Notes under the pieces: generated by a model
Told to the model about the DNA's origin: nothing
Seen by the model: only the letters and a program-made list of their open reading frames with translations
Database searches by the model: none
IMG/VR virus record: IMGVR_UViG_3300031957_002643
Span: 248,001-312,000 of that record
Direction: 5' to 3' (one strand)
Length of the DNA: 64,000 bases
Program-made: the position numbers and the translations under genes
In this document: positions 9,989 to 41,492 of the stretch, piece after piece
How positions within the stretch are numbered: the first letter of the stretch is position 1
How the letters are laid out: the number at the start of each line of letters is the position of its first letter

Positions 9989-10381
9989 ATGAGAATTCAA
10001 GACCTTTACGAAACCAGTGGTTCAATTCAAAAGACCGAATTTACCAGCCGGTACAACAAAAATAAGAAATCACTTTCCAAGTCCGACAAGGTTCTATCCA
10101 AGAGTATTGTCGAACTAGAAACTCTTTTGGCCAAGGGCGAAAAAAGGCCATCCGAGGAAGATAATAAGCTTCAGTCGTATCGTCCCCATGCAATTCCTCA
10201 TATTCGATCCAAAAAAGGTAAAGCCCTCCTTGGTCCACACCAACAAGAGGGCTTTAAACTTTATCAGGCACATCTGAATTCACAGCAGAAAAAAGGCCGT
10301 TTTGTTATGGTCTATGGCGTGAAGGGAACAACATTACGTTTTGTCATTGTGGGAACACATGATGATACAACAGGCGGTTAA
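9989..10381 (+). CDS. YafQ/RelE-like protein with LxE leader
   Basis: FKLYQAHL...FVMVY...LRFVIVGTH resembles YafQ; starts MRIQDLYE; TAAATA upstream. Confidence 0.55.
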   Translation: MRIQDLYETSGSIQKTEFTSRYNKNKKSLSKSDKVLSKSIVELETLLAKGEKRPSEEDNKLQSYRPHAIPHIRSKKGKALLGPHQQEGFKLYQAHLNSQQKKGRFVMVYGVKGTTLRFVIVGTHDDTTGG

Positions 10382-10932
10382 TCATCAGGTTCATAGAAAT
10401 CAAGAACAAGCGATACAGGTTGACTTGATCCCGCAATATTCGTGATTTCGATATAATATAAAGTGTCATTTTTAAAGATAAATTCTTCAAACATACCAGA
10501 CGAATGACCAACCGATTGTGATCGTCCTATCCCGCCCGGTCCAAATTTATCATATAAAATAGTACCAACATCATCAACGGTTGGATTATACCTATATTCA
10601 CTGGTTGCAATATTTGATGAATACCTATTTCTATTAACAGGCACGACAGTGGTACCCACGTTCGTAAACGTAGTACCTTCAAATATGCGAAATCTAGCAT
10701 CACCACCGGTTTGCGCTTCCGCCCGGAGATGGATGCTCTGGCCGTTGGGATTAATGTACATACCAAGGGTGGAATTGTTATTTACAGAGATATCGACCCA
10801 GCTCACCGTATAGAAGATGCCATTATGAATAAGCGCATGAATTTCAGACATACAAATTAGATAATTAGATGTATCATCGACTCCCACGTTTATGCCGCCG
10901 TGTTGTCTGTTTGGAATATTAATGTTCGTCAT
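10378..10932 (-). CDS. Hypothetical beta-rich protein, possibly structural
   Basis: ORF track. Confidence 0.55.
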   Translation of the reverse strand: MTNINIPNRQHGGINVGVDDTSNYLICMSEIHALIHNGIFYTVSWVDISVNNNSTLGMYINPNGQSIHLRAEAQTGGDARFRIFEGTTFTNVGTTVVPVNRNRYSSNIATSEYRYNPTVDDVGTILYDKFGPGGIGRSQSVGHSSGMFEEFIFKNDTLYYIEITNIAGSSQPVSLVLDFYEPDD

Positions 10933-10939
10933 TTTGTGC

Positions 10940-11125
10940 CTAGTGTGCTTTTAATCTTTTGAATGTCATTGCCTTGATCGATGCTTTTTCGATTTTCCCT
11001 CGACCTCGCAAAAACACAAAACGTCCCTTATTGTCCTCAAATTGATCCACAAAGGAACACCCGTCTTTCAGTTTAACAAAGACGTGTGTTCCTTTTCTGA
11101 ATGACGTATGTGGACTACCAGCCAT
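10940..11125 (-). CDS. Small hypothetical protein (TAG stop)
   Basis: ORF track. Confidence 0.5.
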   Translation of the reverse strand: MAGSPHTSFRKGTHVFVKLKDGCSFVDQFEDNKGRFVFLRGRGKIEKASIKAMTFKRLKAH

Positions 11126-11364
11126 AACATTATTTAATGGTCATTGGGATTACTTCTGCGAATGTCTCGCCGTGGATGTTCTTCTGAGTATTATCCTTAG
11201 CATATCCATCCGCTACTTCAAAGTCCGTAAAGGCATGGCATTTTTGGGGAATAAGCGTTTTCCCTCTACCAGTACCGAAATCATAAACCAATACAGTGAA
11301 AATTCGTTGCATGATGTTCTCCTTCATCTTTTCTCTATAATAAGCGGTGTGTATAAATATGTGT

Positions 11365-11871
11365 ATGAAAATTGAAGCTCTTTTCGAAAACGAAGATCAC
11401 AAGCAATATCTCAGATCACTCGGATATCGTGTAGACAATCCGGGCGGTGAATGGTTAGAAAATGCTATTGATCGTTATGGTAGGCCTGCATATCCACGAG
11501 CTGCATCTGGAAAGAACACGGCAACCATTGGAATCTTCAAACCAGTAGAGGTCAACGTTTCTTACTTCATCAAATTTCGAGGCGAACTAGGCGAAGAAAA
11601 TTGGCGACACACCAGCACAAAACGCGAAGCTCTTGCGCGCTCAGTTGAAGAAAATGGCTGGAATGAGGAAGATGCCCATATCATGGTGTTCGTTGCATAT
11701 AATGGAACACCAACAATCGGAGAGGGCAATCACCGATTAGCGTATGCGTTTGATCATGGTATCGAATGGATTCGAGCAGATATTAGATATTTCAATGGTG
11801 GTGAAAGGCCTGATGGTCCATTGAACCCAAAAGACCTTTCACCAAAGATTATCCGGCCTCTTTCACAATAG
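11365..11871 (+). CDS. ParB/sulfiredoxin-like domain protein with LFE leader
   Basis: IGEGNHRL motif; starts MKIEALFENE after TATAAATA (11352-11359). Confidence 0.6.
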   Translation: MKIEALFENEDHKQYLRSLGYRVDNPGGEWLENAIDRYGRPAYPRAASGKNTATIGIFKPVEVNVSYFIKFRGELGEENWRHTSTKREALARSVEENGWNEEDAHIMVFVAYNGTPTIGEGNHRLAYAFDHGIEWIRADIRYFNGGERPDGPLNPKDLSPKIIRPLSQ

Positions 11872-12394: not shown

Positions 12395-12456
12395 AAAAAT
12401 CGAAAATACAATAGAAAATCACATTAAACATAAATACTTCGTGTCTGCGGAGTATA

Positions 12457-13020: not shown

Positions 13021-13048
13021 TCGATTTGTTCTATAAATAATAAATATC

Positions 13049-13133
13049 GCGGGTATGGCGGAACTGGTAGACGCGCGGGTTTTAGGTACCCGTTCCTTAA
13101 GGAGTGGGGGTTCGAGTCCCTCTACCCGCACCA
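13049..13133 (+). tRNA. tRNA-Leu(TAG)
   Basis: Cloverleaf, loop TTTAGGT, variable arm, A73, CCA. Confidence 0.93.
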
Positions 13134-14500: not shown

Positions 14501-14665
14501 TAAATGTGAAGGCAGTGGAGGGTTGGTTTACCTTCGTTAAAGGGAAACCAAAATTTTCGAATTGCGATGAATGCAATGGTCATGGAACCGATGTTGCACC
14601 AACCAATTACGAAATACGATTGAATCGTAAACAATCGAAATTCATGAGCCGTCATAAATAACTGC

Positions 14666-15058
14666 ATGAAGATTGCAGATATTCAATACAAGTTCTTGAA
14701 GACAAAAGAGTTTGAGAAGCGGGGTCTACCACTGCCCCGCTTCTTCAATAATGTTCGAGACGCCTATAAAAGCGAAATCTACGGTGAGTTTGTAGCCTTA
14801 GCGCCAGATTATGATTGGGACAATCCTGTTCCAGAAAAAATCTACGGCTATATCGATTACACCATGGAAAAATCGGACAATATCACCCGCATCAATATGA
14901 TCGAAACCAATAAGCTCTATAAACGTATGGGTATTGGTGCCGAACTTATCCACCAGATGGCGCTAAACCATGAGACCAGTCTTGAACCAACACTGGCGAC
15001 CGAGGATGGTTCCAAATTGATTTCATTTTTACAGAAGCATGGATATTTTAAATCTTGA
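14666..15058 (+). CDS. GNAT-family acetyltransferase
   Basis: INMIETNKLYKRMGIGAELI acetyl-CoA-binding motif A. Confidence 0.7.
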   Translation: MKIADIQYKFLKTKEFEKRGLPLPRFFNNVRDAYKSEIYGEFVALAPDYDWDNPVPEKIYGYIDYTMEKSDNITRINMIETNKLYKRMGIGAELIHQMALNHETSLEPTLATEDGSKLISFLQKHGYFKS

Positions 15059-17109: not shown

Positions 17110-17502
17110 ATGGCAGAGATGTGGGAAATCTTGGTTCCGACCGTCTTTAATGATGGCAGGCCTATCCGTACTCGGTACCACAGGAAGTGGGACGAAAAGG
17201 TTCGTGCCTTGACTGGTGGTATGACCATTCTCCCCGCAGCCAAAGGACAATGGGTGTCCAGTGATGGCAATCTCTTCAAAGAACGCATGATCCCCGTTCG
17301 CATCATGACCGAACGCAAGACCATGCAGGAAATCGCACAGATGACCATGGACCACTACGAGCAGTTGGCAGTCATGGTCTATCGTGTTTCTGATGATGCA
17401 TTCATTGTGAATGCCGATCCTGATATGACTGCTGCGTGGAAGAGCAAGAACAAAATCGGGATGAAAGATTATTCGTGGTTGGAGAATACAGATGAAGCGT
17501 GA
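17110..17502 (+). CDS. Hypothetical phage protein
   Basis: ORF with SD GAGG. Confidence 0.65.
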   Translation: MAEMWEILVPTVFNDGRPIRTRYHRKWDEKVRALTGGMTILPAAKGQWVSSDGNLFKERMIPVRIMTERKTMQEIAQMTMDHYEQLAVMVYRVSDDAFIVNADPDMTAAWKSKNKIGMKDYSWLENTDEA

Positions 17503-17833
17503 AGTTGAAAAACGGAGGGCTTATCTCAAAAGCCGTTCCAGACTGATCAAAGACAAAATCTACAAGAAAAATATCGAACTTCTGGAACGGCTGATCATCA
17601 ATAATGAACCTATTCCAGATTCGTTCCGGTCTCATCTGATCAAGCATCCGGCAAATCCGAAGGGGCGTGCAACCACATCATCATTTGGTCCGAACTGGCG
17701 CTTCTATCAGTGTCATGTTCCATCACAGTCAAATGGTGGCAAGACACAAATTATTTTGTGCTATGCAATCAATACTAAAGAAAACATGGTGTGCTTTGTT
17801 GCAACCGGCAATCACAAAGAAGTCAGCGGCTAA
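17492..17833 (+). CDS. YafQ/RelE-family toxin-like protein
   Basis: NNEPIPDSFRSH..FYQCHV..ILCYAI..FVATGNH matches the YafQ pattern (LP..YKDHPL..YRDAHV..ILIYKL..FERTGTH). Confidence 0.65.
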   Translation: MKREVEKRRAYLKSRSRLIKDKIYKKNIELLERLIINNEPIPDSFRSHLIKHPANPKGRATTSSFGPNWRFYQCHVPSQSNGGKTQIILCYAINTKENMVCFVATGNHKEVSG

Positions 17834-21205: not shown

Positions 21206-21673
21206 CTATGATCCGTATGGACCACCAATATTCCCCATACCTATAACCCTATATTTGGAAACCTTTCTTCCGTTGATTAAAACGGGATACTCGTAATTTC
21301 CTCTTTGGGTTCTTTTTGCGACACCCAAGCTCACATCAGCAACACGCAGCTTTAATTGAATGCGTTGAATGATTTCATCTCTTGTTGAAGTCGCATCAAT
21401 TTTGACCCACTTCTTAGGAGACGATTGCAAAATATAAAATATCCAAGGTAATGCTGTGGCTTCAGAAAGAATATTCTCTATCGTTTCTTTGAGTTTTGGC
21501 TTTTGTGGATTATTTTTTGGTGGCATCTGACGAAGCTGATCTTTCACCGTGCCAGCCTCCTCTTCATCATCGGAACCCCAATGGGCAACCTTGATACGAC
21601 CATGACGATCTAACGTTGGCTTTTCGTCTTCGTTCAAGATTGAATTTAATTGTTCTGATGTGACCGGTTTCAT
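21206..21673 (-). CDS. Hypothetical protein with ILxE motifs (TAG stop)
   Basis: LNSILNED and IENILSEA. Confidence 0.6.
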   Translation of the reverse strand: MKPVTSEQLNSILNEDEKPTLDRHGRIKVAHWGSDDEEEAGTVKDQLRQMPPKNNPQKPKLKETIENILSEATALPWIFYILQSSPKKWVKIDATSTRDEIIQRIQLKLRVADVSLGVAKRTQRGNYEYPVLINGRKVSKYRVIGMGNIGGPYGS

Positions 21674-22023
21674 TTTTCTTTTGGACTCAATAGCGCTCTA
21701 AAACCCGAACGAGTCATGTACATATCAATGATGCGACCAACCGCGTCCTCAGCACGATCATAACCCATCATATCAAAATAGTGTTCAGCAACACTCATTG
21801 CAGCAGTTTCAATATTTTCAGGATTAACACCACCAAGCCTGTCCATTTCCTTTTCCATCATGTTGATGGCAGCAGACCAATCAGAAGAACCCCAATCTTC
21901 TTCAATGATCTGGTCCAACTTGGCTGATGTGACTCTTCCGGTACCAGAGTTCTTTTCTGGGCGACCTTCTGATTCTGTGAAGAGAATTTTATCTAAATCT
22001 TTGGATGTTGGTTTATAGTTCAT
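21670..22023 (-). CDS. Hypothetical protein with repeated TSxxLDxIxxE motif
   Basis: TSKDLDKILFTES and TSAKLDQIIEED. Confidence 0.6.
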   Translation of the reverse strand: MNYKPTSKDLDKILFTESEGRPEKNSGTGRVTSAKLDQIIEEDWGSSDWSAAINMMEKEMDRLGGVNPENIETAAMSVAEHYFDMMGYDRAEDAVGRIIDMYMTRSGFRALLSPKEK

Positions 22024-22426
22024 TTTCTAGTGCCTGTCTCATTGCTTGCATCATTGCGCCTGCATCGAACATTCTATCTGGTCCCAATAGTTCATGCATC
22101 ATCTTGGTAGCACGGGCGACTTTATCCTGTGCAACCGCGAGGCCACCACTGATCAAAACGTTCTCAGTTCCAACCATATTGTCACCGCTCAAAACCGGCA
22201 TGACGATGTACCATTCACCGGCTTCACAATACAGAAGACCTGCATTCTTTGTTACCGTTGGGTCTTGACGCATCTGATGTTGCATCGCGGAATGAACGGT
22301 TTCAAATGGTCCTTCCATATTGCCTTCAATAGTATGGAAGATGAAATAGCCATCCTCATGGGTGCCATCAGATTCGACATATTCTCTGAGAATAGCATTC
22401 AACTTGTTGCGTGTTTTATCAGCCAT
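22013..22426 (-). CDS. Hypothetical protein with LxE leader
   Basis: KLNAILREYVES; TAAATA upstream on the minus strand. Confidence 0.6.
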   Translation of the reverse strand: MADKTRNKLNAILREYVESDGTHEDGYFIFHTIEGNMEGPFETVHSAMQHQMRQDPTVTKNAGLLYCEAGEWYIVMPVLSGDNMVGTENVLISGGLAVAQDKVARATKMMHELLGPDRMFDAGAMMQAMRQALENEL

Positions 22427-22473
22427 TTGGGTAAATCCTTCGAAGTTTATACTATTTAGTCATTTCCTATCAT

Positions 22474-23161: not shown

Positions 23162-24379
23162 ATGACGACAACTATTACCGGATCAGTGTTATTAAAAGAT
23201 GGTTCTGTTACAGCGGCCAAACTAGCGGATGATTCTATTACCTCAGATAAGATTGCTGACAACGCTATTATTGAAAACGCTTATTCAGACAACAGTATTC
23301 CTTCAGCCGCATACAAAGCACAATCAATTGCGACCAGCGCATTAGCAGACGATGCAGTAACGGGTGCTAAGATTGCTGATAATACGATTTCCAGCAATCA
23401 TTACGCCAACACGTCTATTCCTACTGCCGCCTATCAACTTCTATCTGTCACAACTGCCATTCTTGCAAATGATGCTGTGACCAGTGCCAAACTGGCAGAC
23501 GATAGTGTTGGTTCCGAACATCTCATTGATGATAGTGTGATCCGTGCAGCAATCGGTTCTGCTGCTGTTGGCACCGATGAGATTGAAGATTATAAGGTTA
23601 CGCCTGCTAAGTTAGAAAAAGGCACGCAAGGTGATATTCTGGTCGCTACTGGTGGTGATGGAACATTTACTAGATTGAATGCGGGTGATGATGGTGCCGT
23701 TCTTTCTATGCAATCTGGTGTTCCGGCTTGGACAGGTAATGTTCTTCCTTCTGGTGTGATTATGGACTGGTGTGGACAATCCGCTCCTGATGGATGGGTA
23801 ATGGCGAATGGTAGGGCTATTGGTAATGCATCGTCTGGTGCCTCTGGTAGAGCAAATGATGATACTGAAGCCTTGTTCTTATTCTTGTGGGCAAACTTTG
23901 CCGATGCTCAACTTGCCGTTTCTGGTGGACGTGGTGCATCGGCTCAAGCAGACTTTGATGCGAATAAAACTATTGCATTGCCTGATCTGAGAGGCCGTAT
24001 GACGGTTGGTAGAGACAGCATGGGTTCGAGTAGTGCTGGACGAATTACAACGGCTACAGCGACCGCTGGTGGCAATATAATGGGTGCTACAGGTGGTGTG
24101 GAGCGTGTGACCTTGACGGAAGCACAGATGCCGACGCACAAACACTTTAGTGCAGCGGATAATGGTTTGGAGACGGAATTGGGTGGTTCATACTCGTATG
24201 TTTCTGATACGGTACCTATCCACATTCGTGGTAGGGACGTGAGTGGATTGGATTACTACTTTTGGGGATATAACGCTATATTGGCTCCCACGGTCGGGCC
24301 AACCAGTGAAACCGGTGGTTCGCAACCGCATAGTAATATGGCACCATTCTTTGTATTGAGTAAGATTATCAAGCTATGA
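23162..24379 (+). CDS. Tail fibre/tail collar domain protein
   Basis: Repeated VTxAKLADDS units; LPSGVIMDWCG..APDGWVMANG..LPDLRGR tail-collar domain. Confidence 0.85.
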   Translation: MTTTITGSVLLKDGSVTAAKLADDSITSDKIADNAIIENAYSDNSIPSAAYKAQSIATSALADDAVTGAKIADNTISSNHYANTSIPTAAYQLLSVTTAILANDAVTSAKLADDSVGSEHLIDDSVIRAAIGSAAVGTDEIEDYKVTPAKLEKGTQGDILVATGGDGTFTRLNAGDDGAVLSMQSGVPAWTGNVLPSGVIMDWCGQSAPDGWVMANGRAIGNASSGASGRANDDTEALFLFLWANFADAQLAVSGGRGASAQADFDANKTIALPDLRGRMTVGRDSMGSSSAGRITTATATAGGNIMGATGGVERVTLTEAQMPTHKHFSAADNGLETELGGSYSYVSDTVPIHIRGRDVSGLDYYFWGYNAILAPTVGPTSETGGSQPHSNMAPFFVLSKIIKL

Positions 24380-25224
24380 CATTTCTGATTGGATTATTTG
24401 AAAATGATTTCGATGTTAGTAAATCGTATACTCCGTCACGATCCAAGTTCTGGTATAATCCGAAACTGAACGATGTAATTTTTTTCTCTAATCAAAAACA
24501 TCATACAGAAGTTGCCATTGACCAATTTGATTTGGAGATGGAATTGAATGCTATTGAAGGTGATGCTGATGATGATATCATCAATGAGATGATCGATAAT
24601 GGTTGGGTCAGAGGACATTTCATAGAGAATGATCATATTGAAACCCATTTGAACCTGAACGGTAAACTTCGTGATGTTAGAAGAACACTAAAATGGGCGC
24701 TTTCTACTTTTGGTGAATTTGAATATCTGGTTATGGATGTCACAGACGATCCCTCTGTACCGACATATATCACCAGTGACCAATTTGATTTGTTTGTTCG
24801 GAAAGGTATCAGAAAGCGTTTAGGTGAAAGTCAAGATTATGGTGAAATTTACAAGTCGTGGTACAATACCGCAACTGGTGAGTATTTCGTTATTGATAAC
24901 GCTTTTGACTATCATCATTCTCAATGGATGATCGATCATGGATATTACGAGGGTAATATTGATGTACCATTGGATAGTGATGTGGTCGATAGAGCAGTTC
25001 TTGAAGGATGGGTTCGGATCAGACTAGACCATAGTCATATGCTCGATGCCTACAAATTGAACATTCATGCTTTCAATTACGAGAATGCCAAATTAGGATA
25101 CAGGGCGTTGAAGAAACATGCTCGTGGTGTCAAAATCAGTGGCGTGAATATAGAAACTGCACAGCACTATGAGTCATTCAATTACGAAGCTGACTTCATC
25201 AGATTTATTAATCGCGTGACGTGA
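24376..25224 (+). CDS. Hypothetical protein with LFE leader and an internally duplicated WYN...H...GWVR domain
   Basis: MTFLIGLFEND; WYNPK..HH..GWVR and WYNTA..HH..GWVR. Confidence 0.65.
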   Translation: MTFLIGLFENDFDVSKSYTPSRSKFWYNPKLNDVIFFSNQKHHTEVAIDQFDLEMELNAIEGDADDDIINEMIDNGWVRGHFIENDHIETHLNLNGKLRDVRRTLKWALSTFGEFEYLVMDVTDDPSVPTYITSDQFDLFVRKGIRKRLGESQDYGEIYKSWYNTATGEYFVIDNAFDYHHSQWMIDHGYYEGNIDVPLDSDVVDRAVLEGWVRIRLDHSHMLDAYKLNIHAFNYENAKLGYRALKKHARGVKISGVNIETAQHYESFNYEADFIRFINRVT

Positions 25225-25732
25225 CCATGTGAGTATCATTTAGTCTTCCATATTTGGCGAAGGCTTCTAATGATCTATCATGATCGTGCAATAGATACAC
25301 ATCAGCATTATTATCATCGCCACTATATCTGACTGCAATGAAGAGAGATTGGATATTAGGCTTTTTGTTGAGAAGCCATTTTACGCATCGTTTGATCTTT
25401 TTGATATCAGTGCCTTCAATATTGGAATTGGTTTCCTGTGCTCTGATATCAATCAGTAGACGAACCCATCCTTCTTTCATTGCGGCATACAGGGCTGGAC
25501 CAAAATAACTCAATCCTTCATCTTCAACTGGTTCGTCGATCCCAAAGAAATTTGGATTATCGATGACCAATCTAGAATGGCTTCCATTGGAAAATGATTT
25601 CACCATGGCACAGGTGTTTGATTCCAGATTGATCCAGATTTGGGAATTAGCTCGTGACGTTCCCGGCATGATGTCATCACAGGATGTTGTTACTAGGTTG
25701 GAATTATCGTCTTCAAAAAGGGCCATGAGCAT
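25208..25732 (-). CDS. Paralogue of the 24376 protein (single W.N...H...GWVR domain)
   Basis: MLMALFEDD start just after TAAATA; IWINLE..HSR..GWVR. Confidence 0.6.
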   Translation of the reverse strand: MLMALFEDDNSNLVTTSCDDIMPGTSRANSQIWINLESNTCAMVKSFSNGSHSRLVIDNPNFFGIDEPVEDEGLSYFGPALYAAMKEGWVRLLIDIRAQETNSNIEGTDIKKIKRCVKWLLNKKPNIQSLFIAVRYSGDDNNADVYLLHDHDRSLEAFAKYGRLNDTHMVTSRD

Positions 25733-32539: not shown

Positions 32540-32917
32540 ATGAAAATTGATCGTCTATTTGAAGAAACCGTGAAACTCTCCGACATGTATGATGTCGATG
32601 ATCTGCATGATGATGCAGAAATCCTGTATCATTACATCGATCCAGACCAGTTGGATGATGAATTCGAAGTTAAAGAATTATCTTTTGATGAAGCCAAGAA
32701 ATTAAAAACGCCTCGTGGTGATATGACTGTTTGGCAAGCGTATAAAGATCATGCGATGCCTGAACAGGAAGACATCATCAAAAAGAAATTGAAAAATTAT
32801 GATTCGGATCGAGTGATTGTTGTTTATGATGATCAGGTTTTAGACGGGAACCATCATTTGATTGCATCATTGAAACAAAAACTTGGCGTTCGCCTGATTG
32901 ATATTAAGACGATCTAA
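32540..32917 (+). CDS. ParB-like domain protein with LFE leader
   Basis: MKIDRLFEE; VLDGNHH motif; TAAATA at 32529. Confidence 0.6.
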   Translation: MKIDRLFEETVKLSDMYDVDDLHDDAEILYHYIDPDQLDDEFEVKELSFDEAKKLKTPRGDMTVWQAYKDHAMPEQEDIIKKKLKNYDSDRVIVVYDDQVLDGNHHLIASLKQKLGVRLIDIKTI

Positions 32918-33921: not shown

Positions 33922-35067
33922 GTGGAGTATGCTATGCCTGTGAATGGAAAACCATCCATCCGTGATGGGTTCGTGAAAACGAATACACTCGGATATGAAG
34001 AAGAATACGATTACCTCGTATTCATTGGAAGATTTCAACCTCTCCATTACGGGCATATGCGTGTCATTGACATTGCGCTACAACTCTCCAAAAAAGTAGT
34101 TCTGCTCGTTGGTTCGTCCAATGTTGGTCGCACCCTGCGTAACCCGTTCACTTTTCAAGAACGTTACGCCATGATCGCAACACAATACGATCATGCCATC
34201 AAGGATGGTCGTCTCATCATCGACTCAATCGATGATATGATGTATGAAGATGACCGCTGGATCGAGCAGGTTCAGACCAAAGTCAACAGCAAAGTTGGCG
34301 ATACCAAAAATGTCGGTCTGATTGGATGTGAGAAAGATCACACCAGTTATTATCTCAGCCTCTTCCCGAACTGGCATAATGTCGGTGTGGAATTCAAGGT
34401 TCCACTCAACAGTACCGATATCCGCAAGGCTGTGTTCCTTCAGGACAAGCTCTGGGATGATCGTGGTTTTGGTGAAACGCAACATGCCAAGAATGAATTC
34501 TACAAATTCTTGGACAAGGCGTGCCCGCCAGAAATCGCTCAAATCCTTCACGCATTTATGTACAATCCAACAGCAGAAGAAATTCGTGAAGAATGGAAGT
34601 GGATCAATGAATATCGTGCAAAGCGCCAGACCAGCAATTATCCGGTGATTGATATCACTGTTGATGCCTGCGTGGTTCAATCTGGTCATGTTCTGGTTGT
34701 TCGCCGCAAGAATTATCCGGGCAAAGGTCTTCTTGCCCTTCCGGGTGGTTTCTTGAATGAAAACGAAATTCGCGAGAAGGGCATGCTTCGTGAATTGCGA
34801 GAAGAAACTTGCATCGATCTCTCGGATACTGTCCTTCGCGCAAATATCGTGAAAGAAAAAGTTTTCGAAGACCCACACCGTTCAGATCGTGGTCGTCTGA
34901 TTACGACTGCATATCTGATCAAACTTCAGGATCGCCCGGAACTTCCCAAGGTGAAGGGTGCTGATGATGCAGAGAAAGCATTCTGGTTGCCATTGTCCGA
35001 AGTAAAACCTTCGATCTTCTTTGAAGACCATGGATTCATTATCCGAAATCTCACGAGCGGAATCTAA
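33922..35067 (+). CDS. Bifunctional NMN adenylyltransferase / Nudix ADP-ribose pyrophosphatase (NadM-Nudix)
   Basis: FIGRFQPLHYGH, RNPFT and Nudix box ALPGGF..E..GMLRELREET. Confidence 0.93.
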   Translation: MEYAMPVNGKPSIRDGFVKTNTLGYEEEYDYLVFIGRFQPLHYGHMRVIDIALQLSKKVVLLVGSSNVGRTLRNPFTFQERYAMIATQYDHAIKDGRLIIDSIDDMMYEDDRWIEQVQTKVNSKVGDTKNVGLIGCEKDHTSYYLSLFPNWHNVGVEFKVPLNSTDIRKAVFLQDKLWDDRGFGETQHAKNEFYKFLDKACPPEIAQILHAFMYNPTAEEIREEWKWINEYRAKRQTSNYPVIDITVDACVVQSGHVLVVRRKNYPGKGLLALPGGFLNENEIREKGMLRELREETCIDLSDTVLRANIVKEKVFEDPHRSDRGRLITTAYLIKLQDRPELPKVKGADDAEKAFWLPLSEVKPSIFFEDHGFIIRNLTSGI

Positions 35068-35635: not shown

Positions 35636-35639
35636 TCCA

Positions 35640-37094
35640 ATGCTTAATAATCCTATTATCGAACTCATTCTCGCAAACAAAGTCATTTCAACGGACAGCT
35701 ACAAGTTCTCTCACTGGACTCAGTATCCGCCGAATACGACACATGTTTCGAGCTACATCGAATCCCGTGGTCTTTCCAGTGAAGTGAAAGATGATTGGGA
35801 AGATGAAGTCGTTTTCTTCGGCCTGCAAGGCTTCATCAAACGTTACCTCATGACGCCGATCACCATGAAGATGGTCGATGAAGCCGAAGAATACTGCAAG
35901 GCGCATGGTGAACCATTCAACCGTGCTGGTTTCGAAATCATCGTGAATGAATATGATGGCTTCTATCCTGTTGAAATTGAAGCGGTTCCAGAAGGAACTG
36001 TTATGCGTTCTCACAACGCACAGGTTCAAGTCGTCAATACGGATGAACGTCTGTTTTGGGTGACTTCATTCCTCGAAACGTCTCTTCTCCGTGCAGTGTG
36101 GTATCCTTCTACGGTTGCTACTCAAAGCCGCGAAATCAAAAAAGTCATTGCATCCTACATGGATGAAACGGCTGGACATCGTGAAGGTCTCGATTTTAAA
36201 CTCCATGACTTTGGTGCTCGCGGTGTAAGCAGTGCAGAATCCGCTATGATCGGTGGTTCCTCCCATCTGGTCAATTTCATGGGGACTGATACTGGTGAAG
36301 CAAATCTCTGGCTTCGTGCTCTCTATGGTGAAGACATGGCAGCATTCTCTGTGCCTGCCAGTGAACACAGCACCATGACGAGTTGGGGTGGTCCTGCTGG
36401 CGAGGTGGATGCATGTCGCAACATGTTGGAAACCTTTGCTGGTCGCTTCCCGATCATCTCTGTGGTTTCTGACAGCTATGACATTTATCGTTGCATCACT
36501 GACATTTGGGGTGGTGAACTGTACGAAGATGTCAAGGCGCTTGAAAAGGTCGGAAGCAAACTTGTTGTTCGTCCTGACTCGGGTGACCCGACGACTGTTC
36601 CTGTTGAATGCATCAAGCTTCTGATGGAAAAGTTCGGGTACACCACGAATGAACGTGGTTACAAGGTTCTTCCTCCGTTCGTCGGTGTTCTTCAAGGTGA
36701 TGGTATCAACATCCGTTCGATCCGCCAAATCCTTGAAAACATGAAGAAAGAAGGCCTGTCCGCCGAAAACATCGTGTTCGGTATGGGTGGTGCCCTTCTT
36801 CAAAAGGTTGACCGTGATACCTTGAAGTATGCGATGAAGGCATCTGCTCGAAAGACTGATGGTGAATGGCATGATGTCTTCAAGCAGCCGGTCACGGATA
36901 AGGGCAAGATGTCCAAGAAAGGCCGTCTGGTTGTTGTTGAAACTTTGGGTGTTGGTGCTCGTGGTCATCTGACTGTTCGTGCCGATGCCATGCTTTCGAC
37001 CGACAAGAACTTGCTTCGCCCGGTCTATCGTAATGGGGAACTTCTCATGGATGATAGCTTGACGGATATCCGCAAACGCGCTAGTATCCGTTAG
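35640..37094 (+). CDS. nadV: Nicotinamide phosphoribosyltransferase
   Basis: TDSYKFSHW, LHDFGARG, SVPASEHS, SVVSDSYD, VRPDSGDP, QGDGI, FGMGGALLQ. Confidence 0.95.
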   Translation: MLNNPIIELILANKVISTDSYKFSHWTQYPPNTTHVSSYIESRGLSSEVKDDWEDEVVFFGLQGFIKRYLMTPITMKMVDEAEEYCKAHGEPFNRAGFEIIVNEYDGFYPVEIEAVPEGTVMRSHNAQVQVVNTDERLFWVTSFLETSLLRAVWYPSTVATQSREIKKVIASYMDETAGHREGLDFKLHDFGARGVSSAESAMIGGSSHLVNFMGTDTGEANLWLRALYGEDMAAFSVPASEHSTMTSWGGPAGEVDACRNMLETFAGRFPIISVVSDSYDIYRCITDIWGGELYEDVKALEKVGSKLVVRPDSGDPTTVPVECIKLLMEKFGYTTNERGYKVLPPFVGVLQGDGINIRSIRQILENMKKEGLSAENIVFGMGGALLQKVDRDTLKYAMKASARKTDGEWHDVFKQPVTDKGKMSKKGRLVVVETLGVGARGHLTVRADAMLSTDKNLLRPVYRNGELLMDDSLTDIRKRASIR

Positions 37095-37828: not shown

Positions 37829-37829
37829 T

Positions 37830-38288
37830 TTAAATTCTCGGTCTCGTATCTATTCCACCGGTAGGCATTGTGTTGGTGGCAGGCTTTGTTCCACCAGCAG
37901 CCGGTGTTTTGTTTTTTGGTTTTGGTGCTGGTGGTTTTGTGAATGGGAACACTTCAGTGCGAACGCTTCCAGAAAAATCAGAACCAATGTTGATGATCAT
38001 CTTATCGGCAGAAAAATAAGCACCAAGGTAAACACCAGCTTCATCGTAATCTATGAAAATCTTTTGTGGATATGCGTTCTGGAAGATTTCTAGAAATTTG
38101 TTGGAAGCGATGATTTGTGGAAAGTTGTGAGCTTCGAAAGCCGCCAACAATTCATTTTCATCTTTGAATGGTTTGATCTTTTCTTTACTGGAAAAGATAT
38201 TCTTCAAAATATCGAGAAGTCCCTCATCAAGTTGTTCGATTTGGGACTCAGATAGGATTTGAGAAATTTTGGATTTTACATCAATCAT
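37830..38288 (-). CDS. Hypothetical protein with ILSE/QLDE leader
   Basis: KISQILSESQIEQLDEG; late-promoter hairpin upstream. Confidence 0.6.
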   Translation of the reverse strand: MIDVKSKISQILSESQIEQLDEGLLDILKNIFSSKEKIKPFKDENELLAAFEAHNFPQIIASNKFLEIFQNAYPQKIFIDYDEAGVYLGAYFSADKMIINIGSDFSGSVRTEVFPFTKPPAPKPKNKTPAAGGTKPATNTMPTGGIDTRPRI

Positions 38289-38334
38289 GAAGATACCCGC
38301 TGTTCATAGTATTTATTGAACAGCGGGTATCTTC
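38289..38334 (-). promoter_or_regulatory. 18-bp hairpin with late promoter TAAATA in the loop, abutting the start codon
   Basis: GAAGATACCCGCTGTTCA / TGAACAGCGGGTATCTTC perfect inverted repeat. Confidence 0.75.
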
Positions 38335-38339
38335 TGTAT

Positions 38340-39047
38340 CTAGTATCCGAGTTCTTCGGATTCGATTGGATCACTGTCGGGTCCACTCAGTTGGTAAGTT
38401 CTGCCCGCCTTGTTTCCGAGATACAGCGGACCTTCCCAATAAATGAAGTCTTCCCAACCAGAACCTTCAGGAATGATAAGCTTGCGCTTCTTCATCTTCC
38501 CTGCAAGATCGAAATAGCTTGGCTTGTATGGCTTCTTAAGAGGCCCCTTCTTACCAATCGGGCTGACCCAATGTTCATTGTTGCCTTTCTTGCGGTTACA
38601 AGAATCACAAGCAGAAACAATGTTATACCAGTCGGTTCCGCCGCCCTTAGAACGAGGAATAACGTGGTCAAAGGTCAGTTCAGACCCAGCGAATTCGTGT
38701 CCGCAATACTGACAGGTGTACTCATCCCGCAAGAAGATGTTGTTCTTGCTGAACGGAATCGTCTGGTCAGGGTTACGGTACTCCCTTGCAGCGACAATGG
38801 ATGGAAGAGGGATGGTCACGGAAGGTGACCGAATTGCTATGCCTTCGTATTCCTTAACAATATCGTACTTGTCAAGAATCACTCCAACGATTGCATCTCT
38901 CCAATTAATCGCAGACAGCGGGATCACAGAGAAAGGCGAGTAATCCGCGTTAAGAACAAGAGTTCTGAAGCCGTCAAGATGATTAATAGAACCAGCGCCA
39001 GATGCAAGGAAATCTTGATAAACCCGCTTGTCTAAAGTCGTGCTCAT
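38340..39047 (-). CDS. HNH endonuclease (McrA-like)
   Basis: IFLRDEYTCQYCG..LTFDHVIPRSKGG..NIVSACDSCNRKKGN. Confidence 0.88.
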   Translation of the reverse strand: MSTTLDKRVYQDFLASGAGSINHLDGFRTLVLNADYSPFSVIPLSAINWRDAIVGVILDKYDIVKEYEGIAIRSPSVTIPLPSIVAAREYRNPDQTIPFSKNNIFLRDEYTCQYCGHEFAGSELTFDHVIPRSKGGGTDWYNIVSACDSCNRKKGNNEHWVSPIGKKGPLKKPYKPSYFDLAGKMKKRKLIIPEGSGWEDFIYWEGPLYLGNKAGRTYQLSGPDSDPIESEELGY

Positions 39048-39125
39048 TTCAATCTCCTATAGCATACACAAGTATTTACCCGATTTTGGTATTGCTGTCA
39101 ATGATGTTTATAGGATTATATGATA

Positions 39126-41492
39126 CTATCCGAGATTGAGGTCTGGAAACTGGTCGTATAAATGAGTTTCAAAACTTTCCTTAGCAGAATCAATATCATA
39201 ACCAGAGAAACCATAATATGGTTCTTCCATAGATAAGAATTCTTGATCGCTATTGTAATTTGGAAGATCATCAAAATAGTAAGACGACCAATGCTCGTGA
39301 AAATATGGATCATTAAATGCTTCTAGGATTCGATCTTTTGCAACGACCACCCAAACCTTGGCGTCATACTCATACTCTTTACTTGTATTTTCGTATGTTG
39401 GCTCATATTTCACAGGATTATGATTGCCATCATACTTTGGTGACTGGTACCTAATTTCGGCATTTAGACTATCAGAAATTTTGAATACAGCTTCATTGAT
39501 TGCTGATTTGAAATATTCATATGCTTCATTTTCGGCACCGGTTCTTGCACCATCCTGATACGCATATTTTGCCGCCGTCTCAAACTCATCGATTTCGCTC
39601 ATCGCAAAGTCAACAATTTCTCCCAGATCATCTAGATCAATGTCTTCATAATCGTCATCTTCATAATTTTCGATAATGAACTTTTTCAATGCTGCATGAA
39701 TTTCATCCGTCATCAGATCAACGACATCCGAATTATCCGGCGTATCATAACTTGTGTCATAAAATTCATGGCCGTCACCAACAAGACTACCATAATAGTT
39801 TTTCATGAGATCGTTTCCGAACTCGTCAATAAAATCACCGATAGACATACCAGACGGAGATTCTAGATAGTAATGATTTTTATCGAATGTGCTTAATCCA
39901 TCATCAATGTTTTCGGAAAGCGCCATGTATCGCTGCATTGCAATTTTGGAATCGGTCCCAAACATGTCGATATACGTTTGAAGACTTAATGCGTTTGGCT
40001 TGTTCTTTATGAGAATAGACTTTGCTTCTTTTGATAGCCGATCAGCGCCTTCGAGTGTGATGCGATCTGAATCATCCTCATCCAAATCAACTTCTTCCAG
40101 TCCATTAACGTAGTCTATGAATTCTTTTGATTTCACGCCGAACAATCTATCAAGGTCATAGGCTTCCAAAAAGTCAGGACGAGCGGATTTCAATTTATCC
40201 TTTACGCTTTCCTCTTTAATTCTTTCCATAAGACGAGTGAAAGCGTAGCGACTATCGATCAATTTCACGTGTTTGATCATTTGTTCCGAGTCGGCACCAT
40301 AGACTCTCAAAATATCATTTGTTTCTGCAAATTCTGGATGTTTATCAAATATATGACGAAGATAGTTGTCAGAAAGATGTTTTTTCAAATCCATAAATTT
40401 TTGACGAGAAGAGATGTTATCAATGTATGTTTCAAGTTCTTGGGAACCTTCTGGGAAATATCGAACAACTTCTTCCGGTGATGCTAATCCCGGCTTTGCC
40501 TTGATGAGTGATCGCGCTTGTGCCTCTGGTAGATCATTAAGGACAAAATTGTTTTCAGGTTTGTATCCGCCACCATTCATATCATCGATGTAATCGCTTT
40601 TCAGAAGTGCAATCAGATATGGATGATATCTCTCATTTGGCTTTTGATTGTTGTAGCCTTTGATCTCGTAAAGCTCTCTGTCCTTGATCATGGCTGTCAC
40701 ACGAGGAATGACACCCTCTTTTCCAACATCCTGTCTCAAAGAATAAACAGTACCGCCATGTTGTGTTCTTGGATCGGTACAGCAGTGCACCATTGCTGTT
40801 GCTTCTTGCCGACTTACAGATGTATTCAAATCATACCATGCAAATCCATCATTAAAATCAATGATCTTTGTGGCATCATCGGTAACATTCTTGATTGCGC
40901 GTTTTGCTCTTGATGCGATTTCTTGGTAATCCTTCTCCAATTTTTCAAAATGTGACAAAATTTCTTTAGTTGACTGATTTCCAAAAATATAAGCTTGGAT
41001 TGGATTGTATTGAATTCCTAGAAAATGTGATAGATTTTGCAATCTCTTGAAGGTATGACCAGATGGTTGATAGTCACTTTCAAGATTGCGAATATCTTCA
41101 CCAACTTTGACTAGACCCCACATCCCTTGTAGTGATCCTTTTGGTTCTCCTGCGGCAATAGCACGAGCATAATATGTATTCAAAACTTCGGTTGTTGCCT
41201 TGCCGGGTCTGTACTTGTTAGAAACCACGAAATCTAAACAAAGGGCAGCGCGTGATCTATTGAGAAACCACGTGACCCGATCATTTCTGTTTAACAGAGC
41301 AGTTCTAATTCTCTTTACACTATTATTGATCATCTTCTGCGCCGCCAGAGATATGATAGTCGCCTCATCTTCGGATTCGCCACTTGCAACGGCATCTTGA
41401 TAGCAGGCATTGATGAAGGCTTCGAACATTGGTGCATACTGCTTGCGTTCGATTAGTAACTCACCTTCGAATAGATCAATGAGAAATGACAT
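39126..41492 (-). CDS. Large protein with PcfJ-like domain and LFE leader, acidic C-terminus; possible virion internal protein
   Basis: MSFLIDLFEGE; EATAMVHCC..VYSLR..YEIKGYNN. Confidence 0.55.
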   Translation of the reverse strand: MSFLIDLFEGELLIERKQYAPMFEAFINACYQDAVASGESEDEATIISLAAQKMINNSVKRIRTALLNRNDRVTWFLNRSRAALCLDFVVSNKYRPGKATTEVLNTYYARAIAAGEPKGSLQGMWGLVKVGEDIRNLESDYQPSGHTFKRLQNLSHFLGIQYNPIQAYIFGNQSTKEILSHFEKLEKDYQEIASRAKRAIKNVTDDATKIIDFNDGFAWYDLNTSVSRQEATAMVHCCTDPRTQHGGTVYSLRQDVGKEGVIPRVTAMIKDRELYEIKGYNNQKPNERYHPYLIALLKSDYIDDMNGGGYKPENNFVLNDLPEAQARSLIKAKPGLASPEEVVRYFPEGSQELETYIDNISSRQKFMDLKKHLSDNYLRHIFDKHPEFAETNDILRVYGADSEQMIKHVKLIDSRYAFTRLMERIKEESVKDKLKSARPDFLEAYDLDRLFGVKSKEFIDYVNGLEEVDLDEDDSDRITLEGADRLSKEAKSILIKNKPNALSLQTYIDMFGTDSKIAMQRYMALSENIDDGLSTFDKNHYYLESPSGMSIGDFIDEFGNDLMKNYYGSLVGDGHEFYDTSYDTPDNSDVVDLMTDEIHAALKKFIIENYEDDDYEDIDLDDLGEIVDFAMSEIDEFETAAKYAYQDGARTGAENEAYEYFKSAINEAVFKISDSLNAEIRYQSPKYDGNHNPVKYEPTYENTSKEYEYDAKVWVVVAKDRILEAFNDPYFHEHWSSYYFDDLPNYNSDQEFLSMEEPYYGFSGYDIDSAKESFETHLYDQFPDLNLG

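What the first reader, a model, noticed from the sequence alone, without database searches (positions are those of the whole stretch)
9989..41492. Dispersed family of unrelated proteins sharing an N-terminal ...L(F/Y)E or ILxE leader
Seen: MRIQDLYE (9989), MKIEALFE (11365), MTFLIGLFE (24376), MLMALFE (25732), MKIDRLFEE (32540), MSFLIDLFE (41492), KISQILSE (38288), KLNAILRE (22426), LDKILFTE (22023), LNSILNE (21673). Several follow TAAATA. Established: the T4 prohead protease cleaves after (L/I)xE and T4 internal proteins carry short capsid-targeting leaders. Inference: these proteins are head-packaged cargo injected at infection. The cargo would include a YafQ-like RNase and two ParB/Srx-like domains.
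Basis: partly seen in the sequence, partly recalled or inferred. Interest (0 to 1): 0.6.

Follow-up and report, generated by a model that had tools for sequence, protein, structure and literature searches.

The report
Capsid-targeting leaders on jumbo-phage proteins
A 335-kb marine jumbo phage puts two kinds of short N-terminal tag, each ending in a T4-style (Leu/Ile)-x-Glu cleavage motif, on about 30 otherwise unrelated late proteins. These are most likely enzymes loaded into the capsid and injected with the DNA, as T4 does with its internal proteins and Alt, but no experiment has shown it.

Summary
**Observation: confirmed, and larger than reported.** All ten N-termini are in the sequence as described.

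- **Class A leader.** M[KR][IL]xx[LI][FYI]E occurs exactly 10 times in the six-frame translation of the 335-kb genome, always at an ORF start. Eight of the ten sit exactly 5 nt after a T4-type late-promoter box, TAAATA.
- **Class B leader.** Mx(4-8)[KQ][LI][NSD]xILxE has the same hydrophobic/Glu spacing as the T4 capsid-targeting sequence MKTYQEFIAE.
- **Enrichment.** A joint motif marks 17 of 76 late-promoter genes against 16 of 318 other genes, and 0-1 internal control windows.
- **Peptide-level signal.** Codons vary synonymously and the carriers have different folds, so this is not a paralogue family or a DNA element. I verified YafQ/RelE, ParB/Srx and 2H phosphoesterase. In a related phage, two carriers are ART-PolyVal ADP-ribosyltransferases.
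- **Modularity.** Homologues in other phages carry different leaders that also end in (L/I)xE, or none. The window holds a YafQ-fold pair, one with the leader and one without.
- **Protease.** The genome encodes a T4 gp21-family prohead protease. A matching LME site lies before the predicted mature end of the capsid protein.

**Interpretation.** T4-like capsid targeting and cleavage is the best explanation, at about 0.6. Packaging and cleavage are untested. Only one ParB/Srx-fold protein was found, not two. I rate it a new variant of a known kind.

The parts
9989..10381 (+). Class A leader protein (MRIQDLYE|TS..., 130 aa) with a YafQ/RelE-fold RNase-like domain. TAAATA lies at 9978-9983, exactly 5 nt before the ATG.
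   Evidence: Pfam YafQ_toxin is sub-threshold at E 0.0026. The AF2 model has pLDDT 85. Foldseek top hits are YafQ, HP0894, YoeB and RelE, with prob 1.00 and TMt 0.6-0.79. K24, D33, H67, Q93, H95 and H124 are invariant in the family.
11365..11871 (+). Class A leader protein (MKIEALFE|NE..., 168 aa) with a ParB/Srx-fold domain (invariant DNPGGEW and EGNHRLxYA). TAAATA lies at 11354-11359, 5 nt before the ATG.
   Evidence: The AF2 model has pLDDT 84. Foldseek top hits are sulfiredoxin, ParB-N, Osa, Noc and KorB, best E 0.026, prob 0.98.
32540..32917 (+). Class A leader protein (MKIDRLFE|ET..., 125 aa, acidic, function unknown). TAAATA lies at 32529-32534, 5 nt before the ATG.
   Evidence: The only Pfam hit is a weak N-terminal match to DUF6810 (E 0.005).
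25208..25732 (-). Class A variant leader protein (MLMALFE|DD..., 174 aa). TAAATA lies at 25738-25743 on the minus strand, 5 nt before the ATG. It shares a weak domain with 24376 and genome 143787.
24376..25224 (+). Class A variant leader protein (MTFLIGLFE|ND..., 282 aa) with two copies of an unknown domain. Its ATG overlaps the stop of the late tail-collar-domain gene 23162-24379.
   Evidence: The protein atlas gave no usable lead.
39126..41492 (-). Class A variant leader protein (MSFLIDLFE|GE..., 788 aa, net charge -56). It lies downstream of the late gene 41499-41834.
   Evidence: There is only a weak lead to PcfJ-like viral clusters. A relative carries MSFLNQLFEK on a 669-aa homologue.
37830..38288 (-). 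Class B leader protein (MIDVKSKISQILSE|SQ..., 152 aa). TAAATA lies at 38310-38315, 21 nt upstream of the ATG.
22013..22426 (-). Class B leader protein (MADKTRNKLNAILRE|Y..., 137 aa). It is the first gene of a three-gene late operon. TAAATA lies at 22453-22458, 26 nt upstream.
21670..22023 (-). Class B-like leader protein (MNYKPTSKDLDKILFTE|S..., 117 aa). This is the weakest member, because the motif is one residue longer.
21206..21673 (-). Class B leader protein (MKPVTSEQLNSILNE|D..., 155 aa), third gene of the operon.
14666..15058 (+). Doubtful relative: MKIADIQYKF..., 130 aa, weakly GNAT-like. It has the TAAATA-N5-ATG arrangement (TAAATA 14655-14660) and the 'MKIxDI' start, but no Glu at position 8.
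17492..17833 (+). Leaderless paralogue of the 9989 YafQ-fold protein (113 aa, starting at the domain itself). It serves as a natural comparison without the leader.
   Evidence: The A3 profile hits it at E 3.7e-23. BLASTP against 9989 gives 31% identity, E 7e-13. It is syntenic with the leaderless homologue in L141.

Best explanation
**What I think it is.** The short N-terminal leaders are capsid-targeting propeptides of the T4 kind.

**Shown:**
- The phage is a marine relative of the Rak2-like jumbo myoviruses with a T4-type head module.
- About 30 late genes encode otherwise unrelated proteins that begin with one of two leaders.
- Class A is M-(K/R)-(I/L)-x-x-(L/I)-(F/Y/I)-E, eight residues, usually on an mRNA whose ATG lies 5 nt after the late-promoter box.
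- Class B is M-x(4-8)-(K/Q)-(L/I)-(N/S/D)-x-I-L-x-E.

**Inferred mechanism:**
1. The amphipathic hydrophobic pattern binds the scaffold core of the assembling prohead, so the protein is enclosed.
2. The gp21-family protease then cuts after the Glu of the (L/I)-x-E motif. It does the same in the capsid protein (LME at residues 51-53), in its own N-terminus (LIE at 6-8 and 19-21) and in the scaffold.
3. The mature protein stays among the packaged DNA and enters the host with it.

**Cargo.** It consists of single-domain effector-type enzymes:
- a YafQ/RelE-fold RNase;
- a ParB/Srx-fold protein;
- a 2H phosphoesterase;
- weak GNAT-like proteins;
- a small basic DNA-associated peptide;
- many acidic proteins of unknown function.

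A related phage carries ART-PolyVal ADP-ribosyltransferases with the same leader.
For: **1. The motif is real, N-terminus-specific and late-gene-specific.**
- Class A: 10 of 10 six-frame matches are at ORF starts.
- Joint motif: 17/76 late genes against 16/318 others, p 1.3e-5, with internal windows 0-1.

**2. Selection acts on the peptide.**
- The Leu-6 codon has an invariant second base, while its first and third bases vary (TTG, CTG, TTA, CTA, CTT, ATT).
- Position 2 uses AAA, AAG, CGT, CGA and AGA.
- In the relative G006, many class A leaders lack the TAAATA-N5 context.

**3. The carriers are not paralogues.** See the BLASTP all-vs-all and the different folds.

**4. A T4-type protease and head module are present.**
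- Protease. Capsid protein: Pfam Gp23 E 1.8e-88. Portal: phrog_213.
- The capsid protein has LME|NASGG just before the region aligned to the mature T4 gp23* N-terminus.
- The protease starts MTKTALIE, like the LIE-9 site of T4 gp21 (PMC9026906).

**5. The T4 precedent.**
- The CTS is MKTYQEFIAE (PMC8442874).
- Residues 4 and 7 target and residues 8 and 10 are needed for processing; gp21 cuts after L/I-x-E (PMC9026906).
- T-even internal proteins are diverse, with only the CTS conserved (PMC3012670).
- Class B reproduces the hydrophobic-x-x-hydrophobic-hydrophobic-x-Glu spacing.

**6. The leader is modular.**
- YafQ-fold homologues elsewhere start MKVSDLFE, MRLSDILSE, MMTFIRFISE, MMKTFRSYLTE or MRFKQFLRLFE, or have no leader.
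- ParB/Srx homologues switch from class A leaders to other extensions. Three of those end in (I/L)-x-E and one in V-x-E.
- The window holds a pair with and without the leader.

**7. The cargo type fits.**
- Two class A proteins of the relative G006 are ART-PolyVal (E 7e-23 and 7e-15).
- ART, ParB, 2H and RelE-like RNase domains are the repertoire predicted to be virion-packaged in polyvalent proteins, and T4 Alt is a packaged ART (PMC5512222).

**8. A candidate internal protein exists.** A 53-aa very basic late protein with an LAE site (genome 85639-85800) looks like a classical internal protein.
Against: - There is no direct evidence of cleavage or packaging. The phage is uncultured and comes from a seawater metagenome.
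- The protease-plus-leader docking run gave no answer.
- Most carriers are acidic, unlike the highly basic T4 internal proteins.
- About 30 different cargo proteins is many more than T4 has.
- Cultured Rak2-like relatives with the same head module lack the class A leader. Serratia phage BF, Phosso and XaC1 have none, and Vibrio phage 2.275.O has one match. So the head module alone does not predict the leaders.
- Class A is one residue shorter than the T4 pattern.
- (L/I)xE is a short motif. Its specificity for this protease is assumed from homology, which is only E 1.7e-16 to T4 gp21.
- Late promoter identity is inferred from the TAAATA motif. I did not test for a gp55-type sigma factor.
- Gene calls come from my own crude caller, so counts are approximate.
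Confidence: 0.6

Rival explanations
1. The leader is a peptide signal for some other fate than the capsid. Examples are recognition by a chaperone, a host protease degron that times the activity of toxic enzymes, an autoinhibitory propeptide, or targeting to another virion part or cell site.
For: - The conservation is at peptide level and N-terminal, which any peptide signal would produce.
- Several carriers are potentially toxic enzymes, including the YafQ fold and ART-PolyVal. These would need restraint in the producing cell.
- Most carriers are acidic, unlike T4 internal proteins.
- Cultured relatives with the same head genes lack the leader.
Against: - The leaders end specifically in (L/I)xE, the motif of the protease family that the phage encodes.
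- Class B copies the spacing of the proven T4 CTS.
- The genes are late, as head components are.
- There is no hydrophobic stretch for export.
- An autoinhibitory role is compatible with capsid targeting rather than opposed to it.
Confidence: 0.2
2. The shared start reflects nucleic-acid-level constraints. That is, it is a promoter-proximal or translation-initiation element of leaderless late mRNAs, or a recombination cassette that shuffles genes behind a common promoter, not a protein signal.
For: - TAAATA-N5-ATG is a rigid arrangement: 22 of 33 spacings equal 5.
- AUG-AAA-AUU is a favourable start for translation (my own knowledge, not checked here).
- GAA is used for Glu-8 in 10 of 10 cases.
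Against: - About half of the 22 TAAATA-N5-ATG genes lack a class A-type leader.
- Synonymous and Lys/Arg codon variation occurs at conserved residues.
- Class B leaders sit 5-9 residues into the protein, on mRNAs with 21-35-nt leaders and Shine-Dalgarno-like sites.
- In the relative, class A leaders occur inside operons without the promoter.
- The N5 spacer and the upstream DNA are not conserved.
Confidence: 0.07
3. It is a paralogous family, or a chance match in which short motifs recur.
For: - Three members share a weak domain, E 1e-4 to 8e-6.
- (L/I)xE alone is common: about 16% of proteins have one in any 12-residue window.
Against: - The carriers have different verified folds.
- There is no pairwise similarity beyond the leader for the rest.
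- The full motifs are essentially confined to N-termini.
- The promoter-plus-leader pattern has 28 exact hits in IMG/VR, with diverse proteins behind it. My rough estimate of the chance expectation is under 1 to a few.
Confidence: 0.03

Closest known systems
T4 capsid-targeting sequence (CTS) of the internal proteins IPI, IPII, IPIII and the N-terminal propeptide of Alt, removed by prohead protease gp21
   Same: - A short N-terminal tag sits on otherwise unrelated late proteins.
- It ends in (L/I)-x-E.
- Class B has the same hydrophobic(i), (i+3), (i+4), Glu(i+6) spacing as MKTYQEFIAE.
- A gp21-family protease and a gp23-type capsid protein are present.
- A packaged-ART analogue (ART-PolyVal) carries the leader in a relative.
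   Different: - The leader sequences differ and there are two classes. Class A is 8 residues, with Glu at i+5.
- About 30 carriers, against a handful in T4.
- The genes are dispersed over the genome rather than in one hypervariable locus.
- Most cargo is acidic and enzyme-like rather than small and basic.
- Many are on apparently leaderless late mRNAs.
- The host virus is a 335-kb Rak2-related jumbo phage.
- Nothing is shown experimentally.
Propeptide-bearing head and ejection proteins of phiKZ-like giant phages (phiKZ, 201phi2-1, SPN3US)
   Same: Many different head-internal proteins are processed by a diverged gp21 homologue, C-terminal to Glu.
   Different: - Those phages cut at S/A/G-x-E, usually after long propeptides, with no common short leader reported (PMC9026906).
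- Here the motif is (L/I)-x-E after an 8-16-residue shared leader.
- The phage lineage is different.
Polyvalent proteins of phages and conjugative elements (Iyer et al. 2017, PMC5512222)
   Same: The effector domain repertoire overlaps: ART-PolyVal, ParB/Srx, 2H phosphoesterase and RelE-like RNase. All are predicted to be delivered with the DNA.
   Different: Polyvalent proteins fuse 2-15 domains in one polypeptide. Here each domain is a separate small protein with its own leader.
Rak2-like jumbo myoviruses (RaK2, BF, fHe-Yen9-04, XaC1, Phosso, Vibrio phage 2.275.O)
   Same: - Capsid protein is 55-56% identical.
- Head-module order is the same: hub, structural protein, portal, acidic protein, protease, scaffold, capsid protein.
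   Different: - The cultured members tested lack the class A leader family.
- BF, the one member tested for it, shows no TAAATA-N5-ATG enrichment.

Membership tests
T4-type CTS / internal-protein system | A short N-terminal leader shared by proteins that are otherwise unrelated | tested here: met
   - All 10 six-frame matches of class A are at ORF starts.
- All-vs-all BLASTP shows no similarity beyond the leader, except in one trio.
- The carriers have distinct folds.
T4-type CTS / internal-protein system | The leader ends in the gp21 cleavage motif (L/I)-x-E | tested here: met
   - Class A has L/I at position 6 and E at position 8. Class B has IL-x-E.
- 22023 (ILFTE) and 14666 (no Glu) do not fit.
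T4-type CTS / internal-protein system | The phage encodes a gp21-family (Peptidase_S77) prohead protease within a T4-type head module | tested here: met
   - PF03420 E 3.6e-24, phrog_207 1.5e-48 and PDB 5JBL 1.7e-16.
- His (DHPD) and Ser (GVSSRG) lie at the aligned positions I take, from memory, to be catalytic in T4 gp21.
- Gp23 capsid protein and portal are present.
T4-type CTS / internal-protein system | Spacing of targeting and processing residues as in MKTYQEFIAE (positions 4, 7 and 8, 10) | tested here: inconclusive
   - Class B matches the hydrophobic-x-x-hydrophobic-hydrophobic-x-E pattern.
- Class A is one residue shorter.
- Homology of 8-16-residue peptides cannot be tested statistically (PMC9026906, PMC8442874).
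T4-type CTS / internal-protein system | Late expression together with head genes | tested here: met
- Enrichment p 1.3e-5.
- No transcript data exist.
T4-type CTS / internal-protein system | Proteins are found cleaved inside virions and are injected | not testable with these tools
   The phage is uncultured. The docking job gave no answer.
T4-type CTS / internal-protein system | Cargo is small and highly basic (classical IPs) | tested here: not met
   - Most carriers have net negative charge.
- Only the 53-aa protein at genome 85639-85800 and the 9989 protein are basic.
- Alt shows that non-basic enzymes can also be cargo in T4.
Polyvalent proteins | Two or more effector domains fused in one polypeptide | tested here: not met
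   The carriers I could annotate (9989, 11365, genome 128034-128630) are single-domain proteins of 130-198 aa, out of a set spanning about 60-790 aa. 24376 has two copies of one unknown domain.
YafQ/RelE toxin fold (protein 9989) | RelE/YafQ fold with conserved His residues | tested here: met
   - Foldseek top hits are YafQ, YoeB and RelE, prob 1.00.
- H67, H95 and H124 are invariant.
- The Pfam score of 18.4 is below the cut-off of 30, so it is a distant member.
- I did not look for an antitoxin.
ParB/Srx superfamily (protein 11365) | ParB/Srx fold with a conserved Arg-containing G-x-x-R motif | tested here: met
   - The EGNHRLxYA motif is invariant.
- Foldseek hits are almost all Srx, ParB, Osa, Noc and KorB, but weak (best E 0.026, prob 0.98).
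- No Pfam hit.
2H phosphoesterase (genome 128034-128630) | Two H-x-T/S motifs | tested here: met
   - HHIT and HIT are invariant in six homologues.
- There are three sub-threshold hits to what I take to be related 2H-type Pfam families.

The most novel reading that the evidence does not exclude
A lineage of marine jumbo phages devotes roughly 8% of its genes to an 'unbundled' arsenal of capsid-delivered effectors. Each effector is tagged by one of two short, interchangeable, protease-removable leaders. If so, the leader together with the late promoter is a sequence tag that can be searched for. It would identify injected proteins, such as anti-defence or host-takeover factors, directly from metagenomes. 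It would also show effectors moving in and out of the injected set by gaining or losing 8-16 codons.
Probability: 0.45. Interest if true: 0.75.

Novelty: new variant of a known kind. Interest (0 to 1): 0.62.

Why it matters
Injected virion proteins act before any phage gene is expressed, so they are prime candidates for first-strike counter-defence and host takeover. They are very hard to recognise from sequence.

If these leaders are capsid-targeting tags, they label about 30 such proteins in one genome, most of them of unknown function. They also give a simple rule that already finds carriers in other uncultured phages: a late promoter, a leader with the hydrophobic pattern, and a closing (L/I)xE.

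It would extend the T4 CTS principle from a few T-even internal proteins to jumbo phages. It would also show that a capsid-delivered effector repertoire can be built from many single-domain proteins instead of giant polyvalent fusions.

The pairs with and without the leader (YafQ-fold paralogues, homologues in other phages) would document how a cytoplasmic phage protein becomes an injected one.

The rigid TAAATA-N5-ATG geometry also suggests that many late mRNAs in this and other jumbo phages are leaderless. That is a separate, testable point.

Tried and rejected
- **Docking.** Complex prediction with the protease (residues 22-185) and the first 40 residues of the 32540 protein scored 0.02, below the mark. 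This is no answer either way.
- **Pfam and PHROGs on 28 leader proteins.** Nothing scored above the Pfam cut-offs and PHROGs gave only one weak hit. PHROGs has essentially no family for them.
- **Word search for 9989.** It found only the protein itself. The exhaustive search was needed.
- **P0020.** This 1841-aa hit is a repeat artefact, not a polyvalent protein.
- **Profile searches of PDB sequences.** The ParB-like and YafQ-like alignments found nothing. Only fold comparison worked.
- **Protein atlas.** The 788-aa protein gave only a weak PcfJ lead, and 24376 gave nothing usable.
- **tblastn of a small basic MKISELFE protein against cultured phages.** No match.
- **Faster evolution of leader proteins.** Rejected. 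Identity to the relative is 30-58%, against a genome median of 56%.
- **L141:12127 as a leaderless orthologue of 9989.** Corrected. It is syntenic with the leaderless paralogue at 17492.
- **Second ParB/Srx domain among the leader proteins.** Not found with the A1 profile.
- **MENIKDLYEG at genome 78179.** This is an internal Met of a longer TerD-like ORF, so I dropped it.
- **Reads.** No RNA runs hold the sequence, so I did not use read laying.

Full report
**Where the window lies.** The window is bases 248,001-312,000 of a 335,552-bp IMG/VR virus record with direct terminal repeats, 42% G+C. Public runs that hold it are seawater metagenomes. The genome has a T4-type head module:
- portal (phrog_213, E 1e-78);
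- a very acidic 229-aa protein;
- prohead protease (Pfam Peptidase_S77 E 3.6e-24; phrog_207 E 1.5e-48; T4 gp21 structure 5JBL E 1.7e-16);
- a 360-aa scaffold-like protein;
- a Gp23-family capsid protein (E 1.8e-88).

The nearest cultured relatives by capsid protein (55-56% identity) are the Rak2-like jumbo myoviruses: EJP2, BF, fHe-Yen9-04, XaC1, Phosso and Vibrio phage 2.275.O. Serratia phage BF has the same head-gene order.

**Checking the observation.** Genome-wide they fall into two leader classes.

*Class A* is M[KR][IL]xx[LI][FYI]E at residues 1-8.
- It has exactly ten matches in the six-frame translation of the whole genome.
- Every match lies 0-29 codons after a stop and opens an ORF of 104-294 aa.
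- Three are in the window: 9989, 11365 and 32540.
- Looser variants with the same (hydrophobic)xxLFE core include MLMALFE (25732-), MTFLIGLFE (24376+), MSFLIDLFE (41492-), MLMHLFE, MSLLQSLFE and MKSLNTYLFE.

*Class B* is Mx(4-8)[KQ][LI][NSD]xILxE.
- At least ten more lie elsewhere in the genome.
- In my gene set it occurs 8 times near the N-terminus and once internally in 88,675 residues.

A joint motif, [LIV]xx[LI][LFYI]x?E within the first 20 residues, marks 17 of 76 genes with a TAAATA box within 45 nt upstream. It marks 16 of 318 other genes (Fisher p 1.3e-5). Internal 20-residue windows of the same late proteins give only 0-1 of 64-76. That makes about 33 genes, roughly 8% of my crude gene set. 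The counts depend on a home-made gene caller and are approximate.

**The TAAATA link.** TAAATA is rare, at 140 copies on both strands.
- Among ATG-ORFs within 15 nt downstream, the spacing is exactly 5 nt in 22 of 33 cases.
- Over 60 nt the spacing is bimodal, at 5 nt and about 16-32 nt.
- Eight of the ten strict class A genes have the 5-nt spacing.

T4 late promoters are an 8-bp TATA box about one helical turn upstream of the start site (PMC2988020). The 5-nt spacing would therefore put the transcript start at or next to the A of the ATG. This is inference, not measured.

**Is it a peptide signal?** Yes, on four grounds.
1. Conserved residues use different codons. Leu-6 is TTG, CTG, TTA, CTA, CTT or ATT, and Lys/Arg-2 is AAA, AAG, CGT, CGA or AGA. 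The 5-nt spacer and the upstream DNA are not conserved.
2. About half of the TAAATA-N5-ATG genes lack a class A-type leader, so translation does not require it.
3. Class B leaders lie several residues into the protein, on mRNAs with ordinary leaders.
4. Fragments of a related phage (IMG/VR 3300010368_000011/12 and two others) carry about 17 class A and 3 class B leaders. Its capsid protein is 91-93% identical to ours, but the median protein identity is only 56%. Many of its leaders sit inside operons without the promoter.

**Are the carriers related?** Mostly not. All-vs-all BLASTP links only 24376, 25732 and genome 143787, through one weak domain. Pfam and PHROGs give nothing above threshold. 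Where I could build alignments, the folds differ.
- *9989* has a YafQ/RelE fold. The AF2 model has pLDDT 85. Foldseek top hits are YafQ, HP0894, YoeB and RelE at prob 1.00. Three His residues are invariant.
- *11365* has a ParB/Srx fold. DNPGGEW and EGNHRLxYA are invariant, and the model has pLDDT 84. The hits are almost all Srx, ParB, Osa, Noc or KorB, although weak, with best E 0.026.
- *Genome 128034-128630* (class B) is a 2H phosphoesterase with two invariant HxT motifs.
- Three proteins give weak but concordant GNAT hits.
- In the related phage, two class A proteins are ART-PolyVal ADP-ribosyltransferases, E 7e-23 and 7e-15, above the Pfam cut-off. Our genome has no match to that family.

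**The leader is modular.** Homologues of the YafQ-fold protein in other metagenomic phages start in several ways, or have no extension at all:
- MKVSDLFE;
- MRLSDILSE;
- MMTFIRFISE;
- MMKTFRSYLTE, very close to the T4 CTS MKTYQEFIAE;
- MRFKQFLRLFE.

Close homologues of the ParB/Srx protein keep class A leaders. Distant ones have other extensions that end in ILSE, ITE, ISE or VLE right before the conserved domain.

The window itself holds a natural pair. 9989 has the leader and a late N5 promoter. 17492-17833 is a 31%-identical paralogue that begins at the domain, with neither.

The combined promoter-plus-class-A DNA pattern has 28 exact hits in IMG/VR, on many different contigs. My rough chance estimate is below one to a few. 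The hits front proteins of 13-607 aa, including:
- small, very basic proteins;
- proteins with a WFG...HGT motif like that at the start of the ART-PolyVal match in G006. This is my reading; they were not scanned.

Other jumbo contigs show the TAAATA-N5-ATG arrangement but few leaders. Cultured BF, Phosso and XaC1 have none, and Vibrio phage 2.275.O has one. The large family is therefore specific to this lineage.

**Most likely mechanism.** In T4:
- the first ten residues of IPIII (MKTYQEFIAE) suffice to load any protein into the prohead core;
- residues 4 and 7 matter for targeting, and residues 8 and 10 for processing;
- gp21 cuts after L/I-x-E;
- T-even internal proteins are highly diverse apart from this tag.

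These facts come from PMC9026906, PMC8442874 and PMC3012670. Class B has the same hydrophobic(i), (i+3), (i+4), Glu(i+6) pattern. Class A has Glu at i+5, with L-(F/Y)-E as the cleavage motif.

This phage's own head proteins carry matching sites where T4's do:
- LME|NASGG just before the part of the capsid protein that aligns with the mature gp23* N-terminus;
- LIE at residues 6-8 of the protease, like LIE-9 of gp21;
- 24 [LIVM]xE sites in the 360-aa scaffold-like protein.

I therefore think the leaders load these late proteins into the prohead core. The protease would then remove the leader, and the mature proteins would be ejected with the DNA.

The cargo domains (ART, ParB/Srx, 2H, RelE-like RNase) are those predicted to be virion-delivered in polyvalent proteins, and T4 Alt is a packaged ART (PMC5512222). 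Here they appear as separate small proteins, each with its own tag. A 53-aa, very basic late protein with an LAE site (genome 85639-85800) looks like a classical internal protein.

*Shown:* the motifs, their position and their enrichment; the promoter link; peptide-level conservation; the protease and head module; three folds; and modularity.

*Inferred:* binding to the core, cleavage, packaging and injection.

**Caveats.**
- There are no experimental data.
- The docking attempt gave no answer.
- Most carriers are acidic, unlike T4 internal proteins.
- The number of carriers is large.
- Relatives with the same head module lack the leaders.
- The protease's specificity is assumed from family membership.
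- Late-promoter identity rests on the motif alone, and I did not look for a gp55-type sigma factor.
- I found one ParB/Srx-fold protein, not two.

**Verdict.** It is a new variant of a known kind: the T4 CTS principle with different leaders, a far larger and dispersed cargo set, and a jumbo-phage setting.

Noticed in passing
genome-wide; in the window e.g. 9978-9991, 11354-11367, 14655-14668, 32529-32542, 25730-25743(-): TAAATA-N5-ATG is a rigid arrangement. It applies to 22 genes here, half of them without the leader. By T4 late-promoter geometry this implies leaderless late mRNAs. It is also enriched in other IMG/VR jumbo contigs (25 against 7 control, and 20 against 3) but not in Serratia phage BF (5 against 13).
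   Followed up: partly
window 6867-6942 (+): A tRNA with anticodon CUA, labelled 'Pyl' by ARAGORN, so amber-suppressor-like. It sits among 17 tRNA genes in the window. 47 of 387 home-called genes end in TAG. I did not check whether TAG is read through in any gene.
   Followed up: no
window 17492-17833 (+) and 9989-10381 (+): Two YafQ/RelE-fold paralogues, 31% identical. One has the leader and a late promoter, and the other has neither. I looked for no antitoxin next to either.
   Followed up: partly
genome 85639-85800 (-), outside the window; also L018:4151-4405, L029:3554-3811, L038:6392-6577: Small, very basic late proteins. After the leader they carry SGATSAGNIA, which resembles the mature N-terminal arm of the capsid protein (GGATAAGNIAAL). 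They could be internal-protein-like DNA binders or mimics of the capsid N-arm.
   Followed up: partly
window 28579-30195 (-): A phage-encoded Ro60 orthologue (TROVE E 3e-41 plus Ro60 vWA E 1e-66) inside the tRNA-rich region. I did not search for a Y-RNA-like partner.
   Followed up: no
window 33934-35067 (+) and 35640-37094 (+): An NAD salvage pair: a cytidylyltransferase-like/NUDIX fusion and nicotinamide phosphoribosyltransferase (NAMPT). This is the kind of module linked to countering NAD-depleting defences.
   Followed up: no
window 13038-13133 (+): A TAAATA box lies 8 nt upstream of tRNA-Leu (13049-13133). This suggests that some tRNAs are transcribed from late-type promoters.
   Followed up: no
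window 38340-39047 (-): An HNH endonuclease gene (E 1e-16) with its own TAAATA box sits between two leader-bearing genes (37830-38288 and 39126-41492).
   Followed up: no
window 57382 to beyond 64000 (+): A late-promoter-driven giant ORF of 4,535 aa starts here and runs off the window. The genome also has late ORFs of 2,957 and 1,920 aa.
   Followed up: no
genome 128034-128630 (-), outside the window: A class B leader on a 2H phosphoesterase. As far as I recall (not checked here), this is the fold of phage cyclic-nucleotide-degrading anti-CBASS enzymes such as T4 Acb1. If it is packaged, it could act on defence signalling at the moment of injection.
   Followed up: partly
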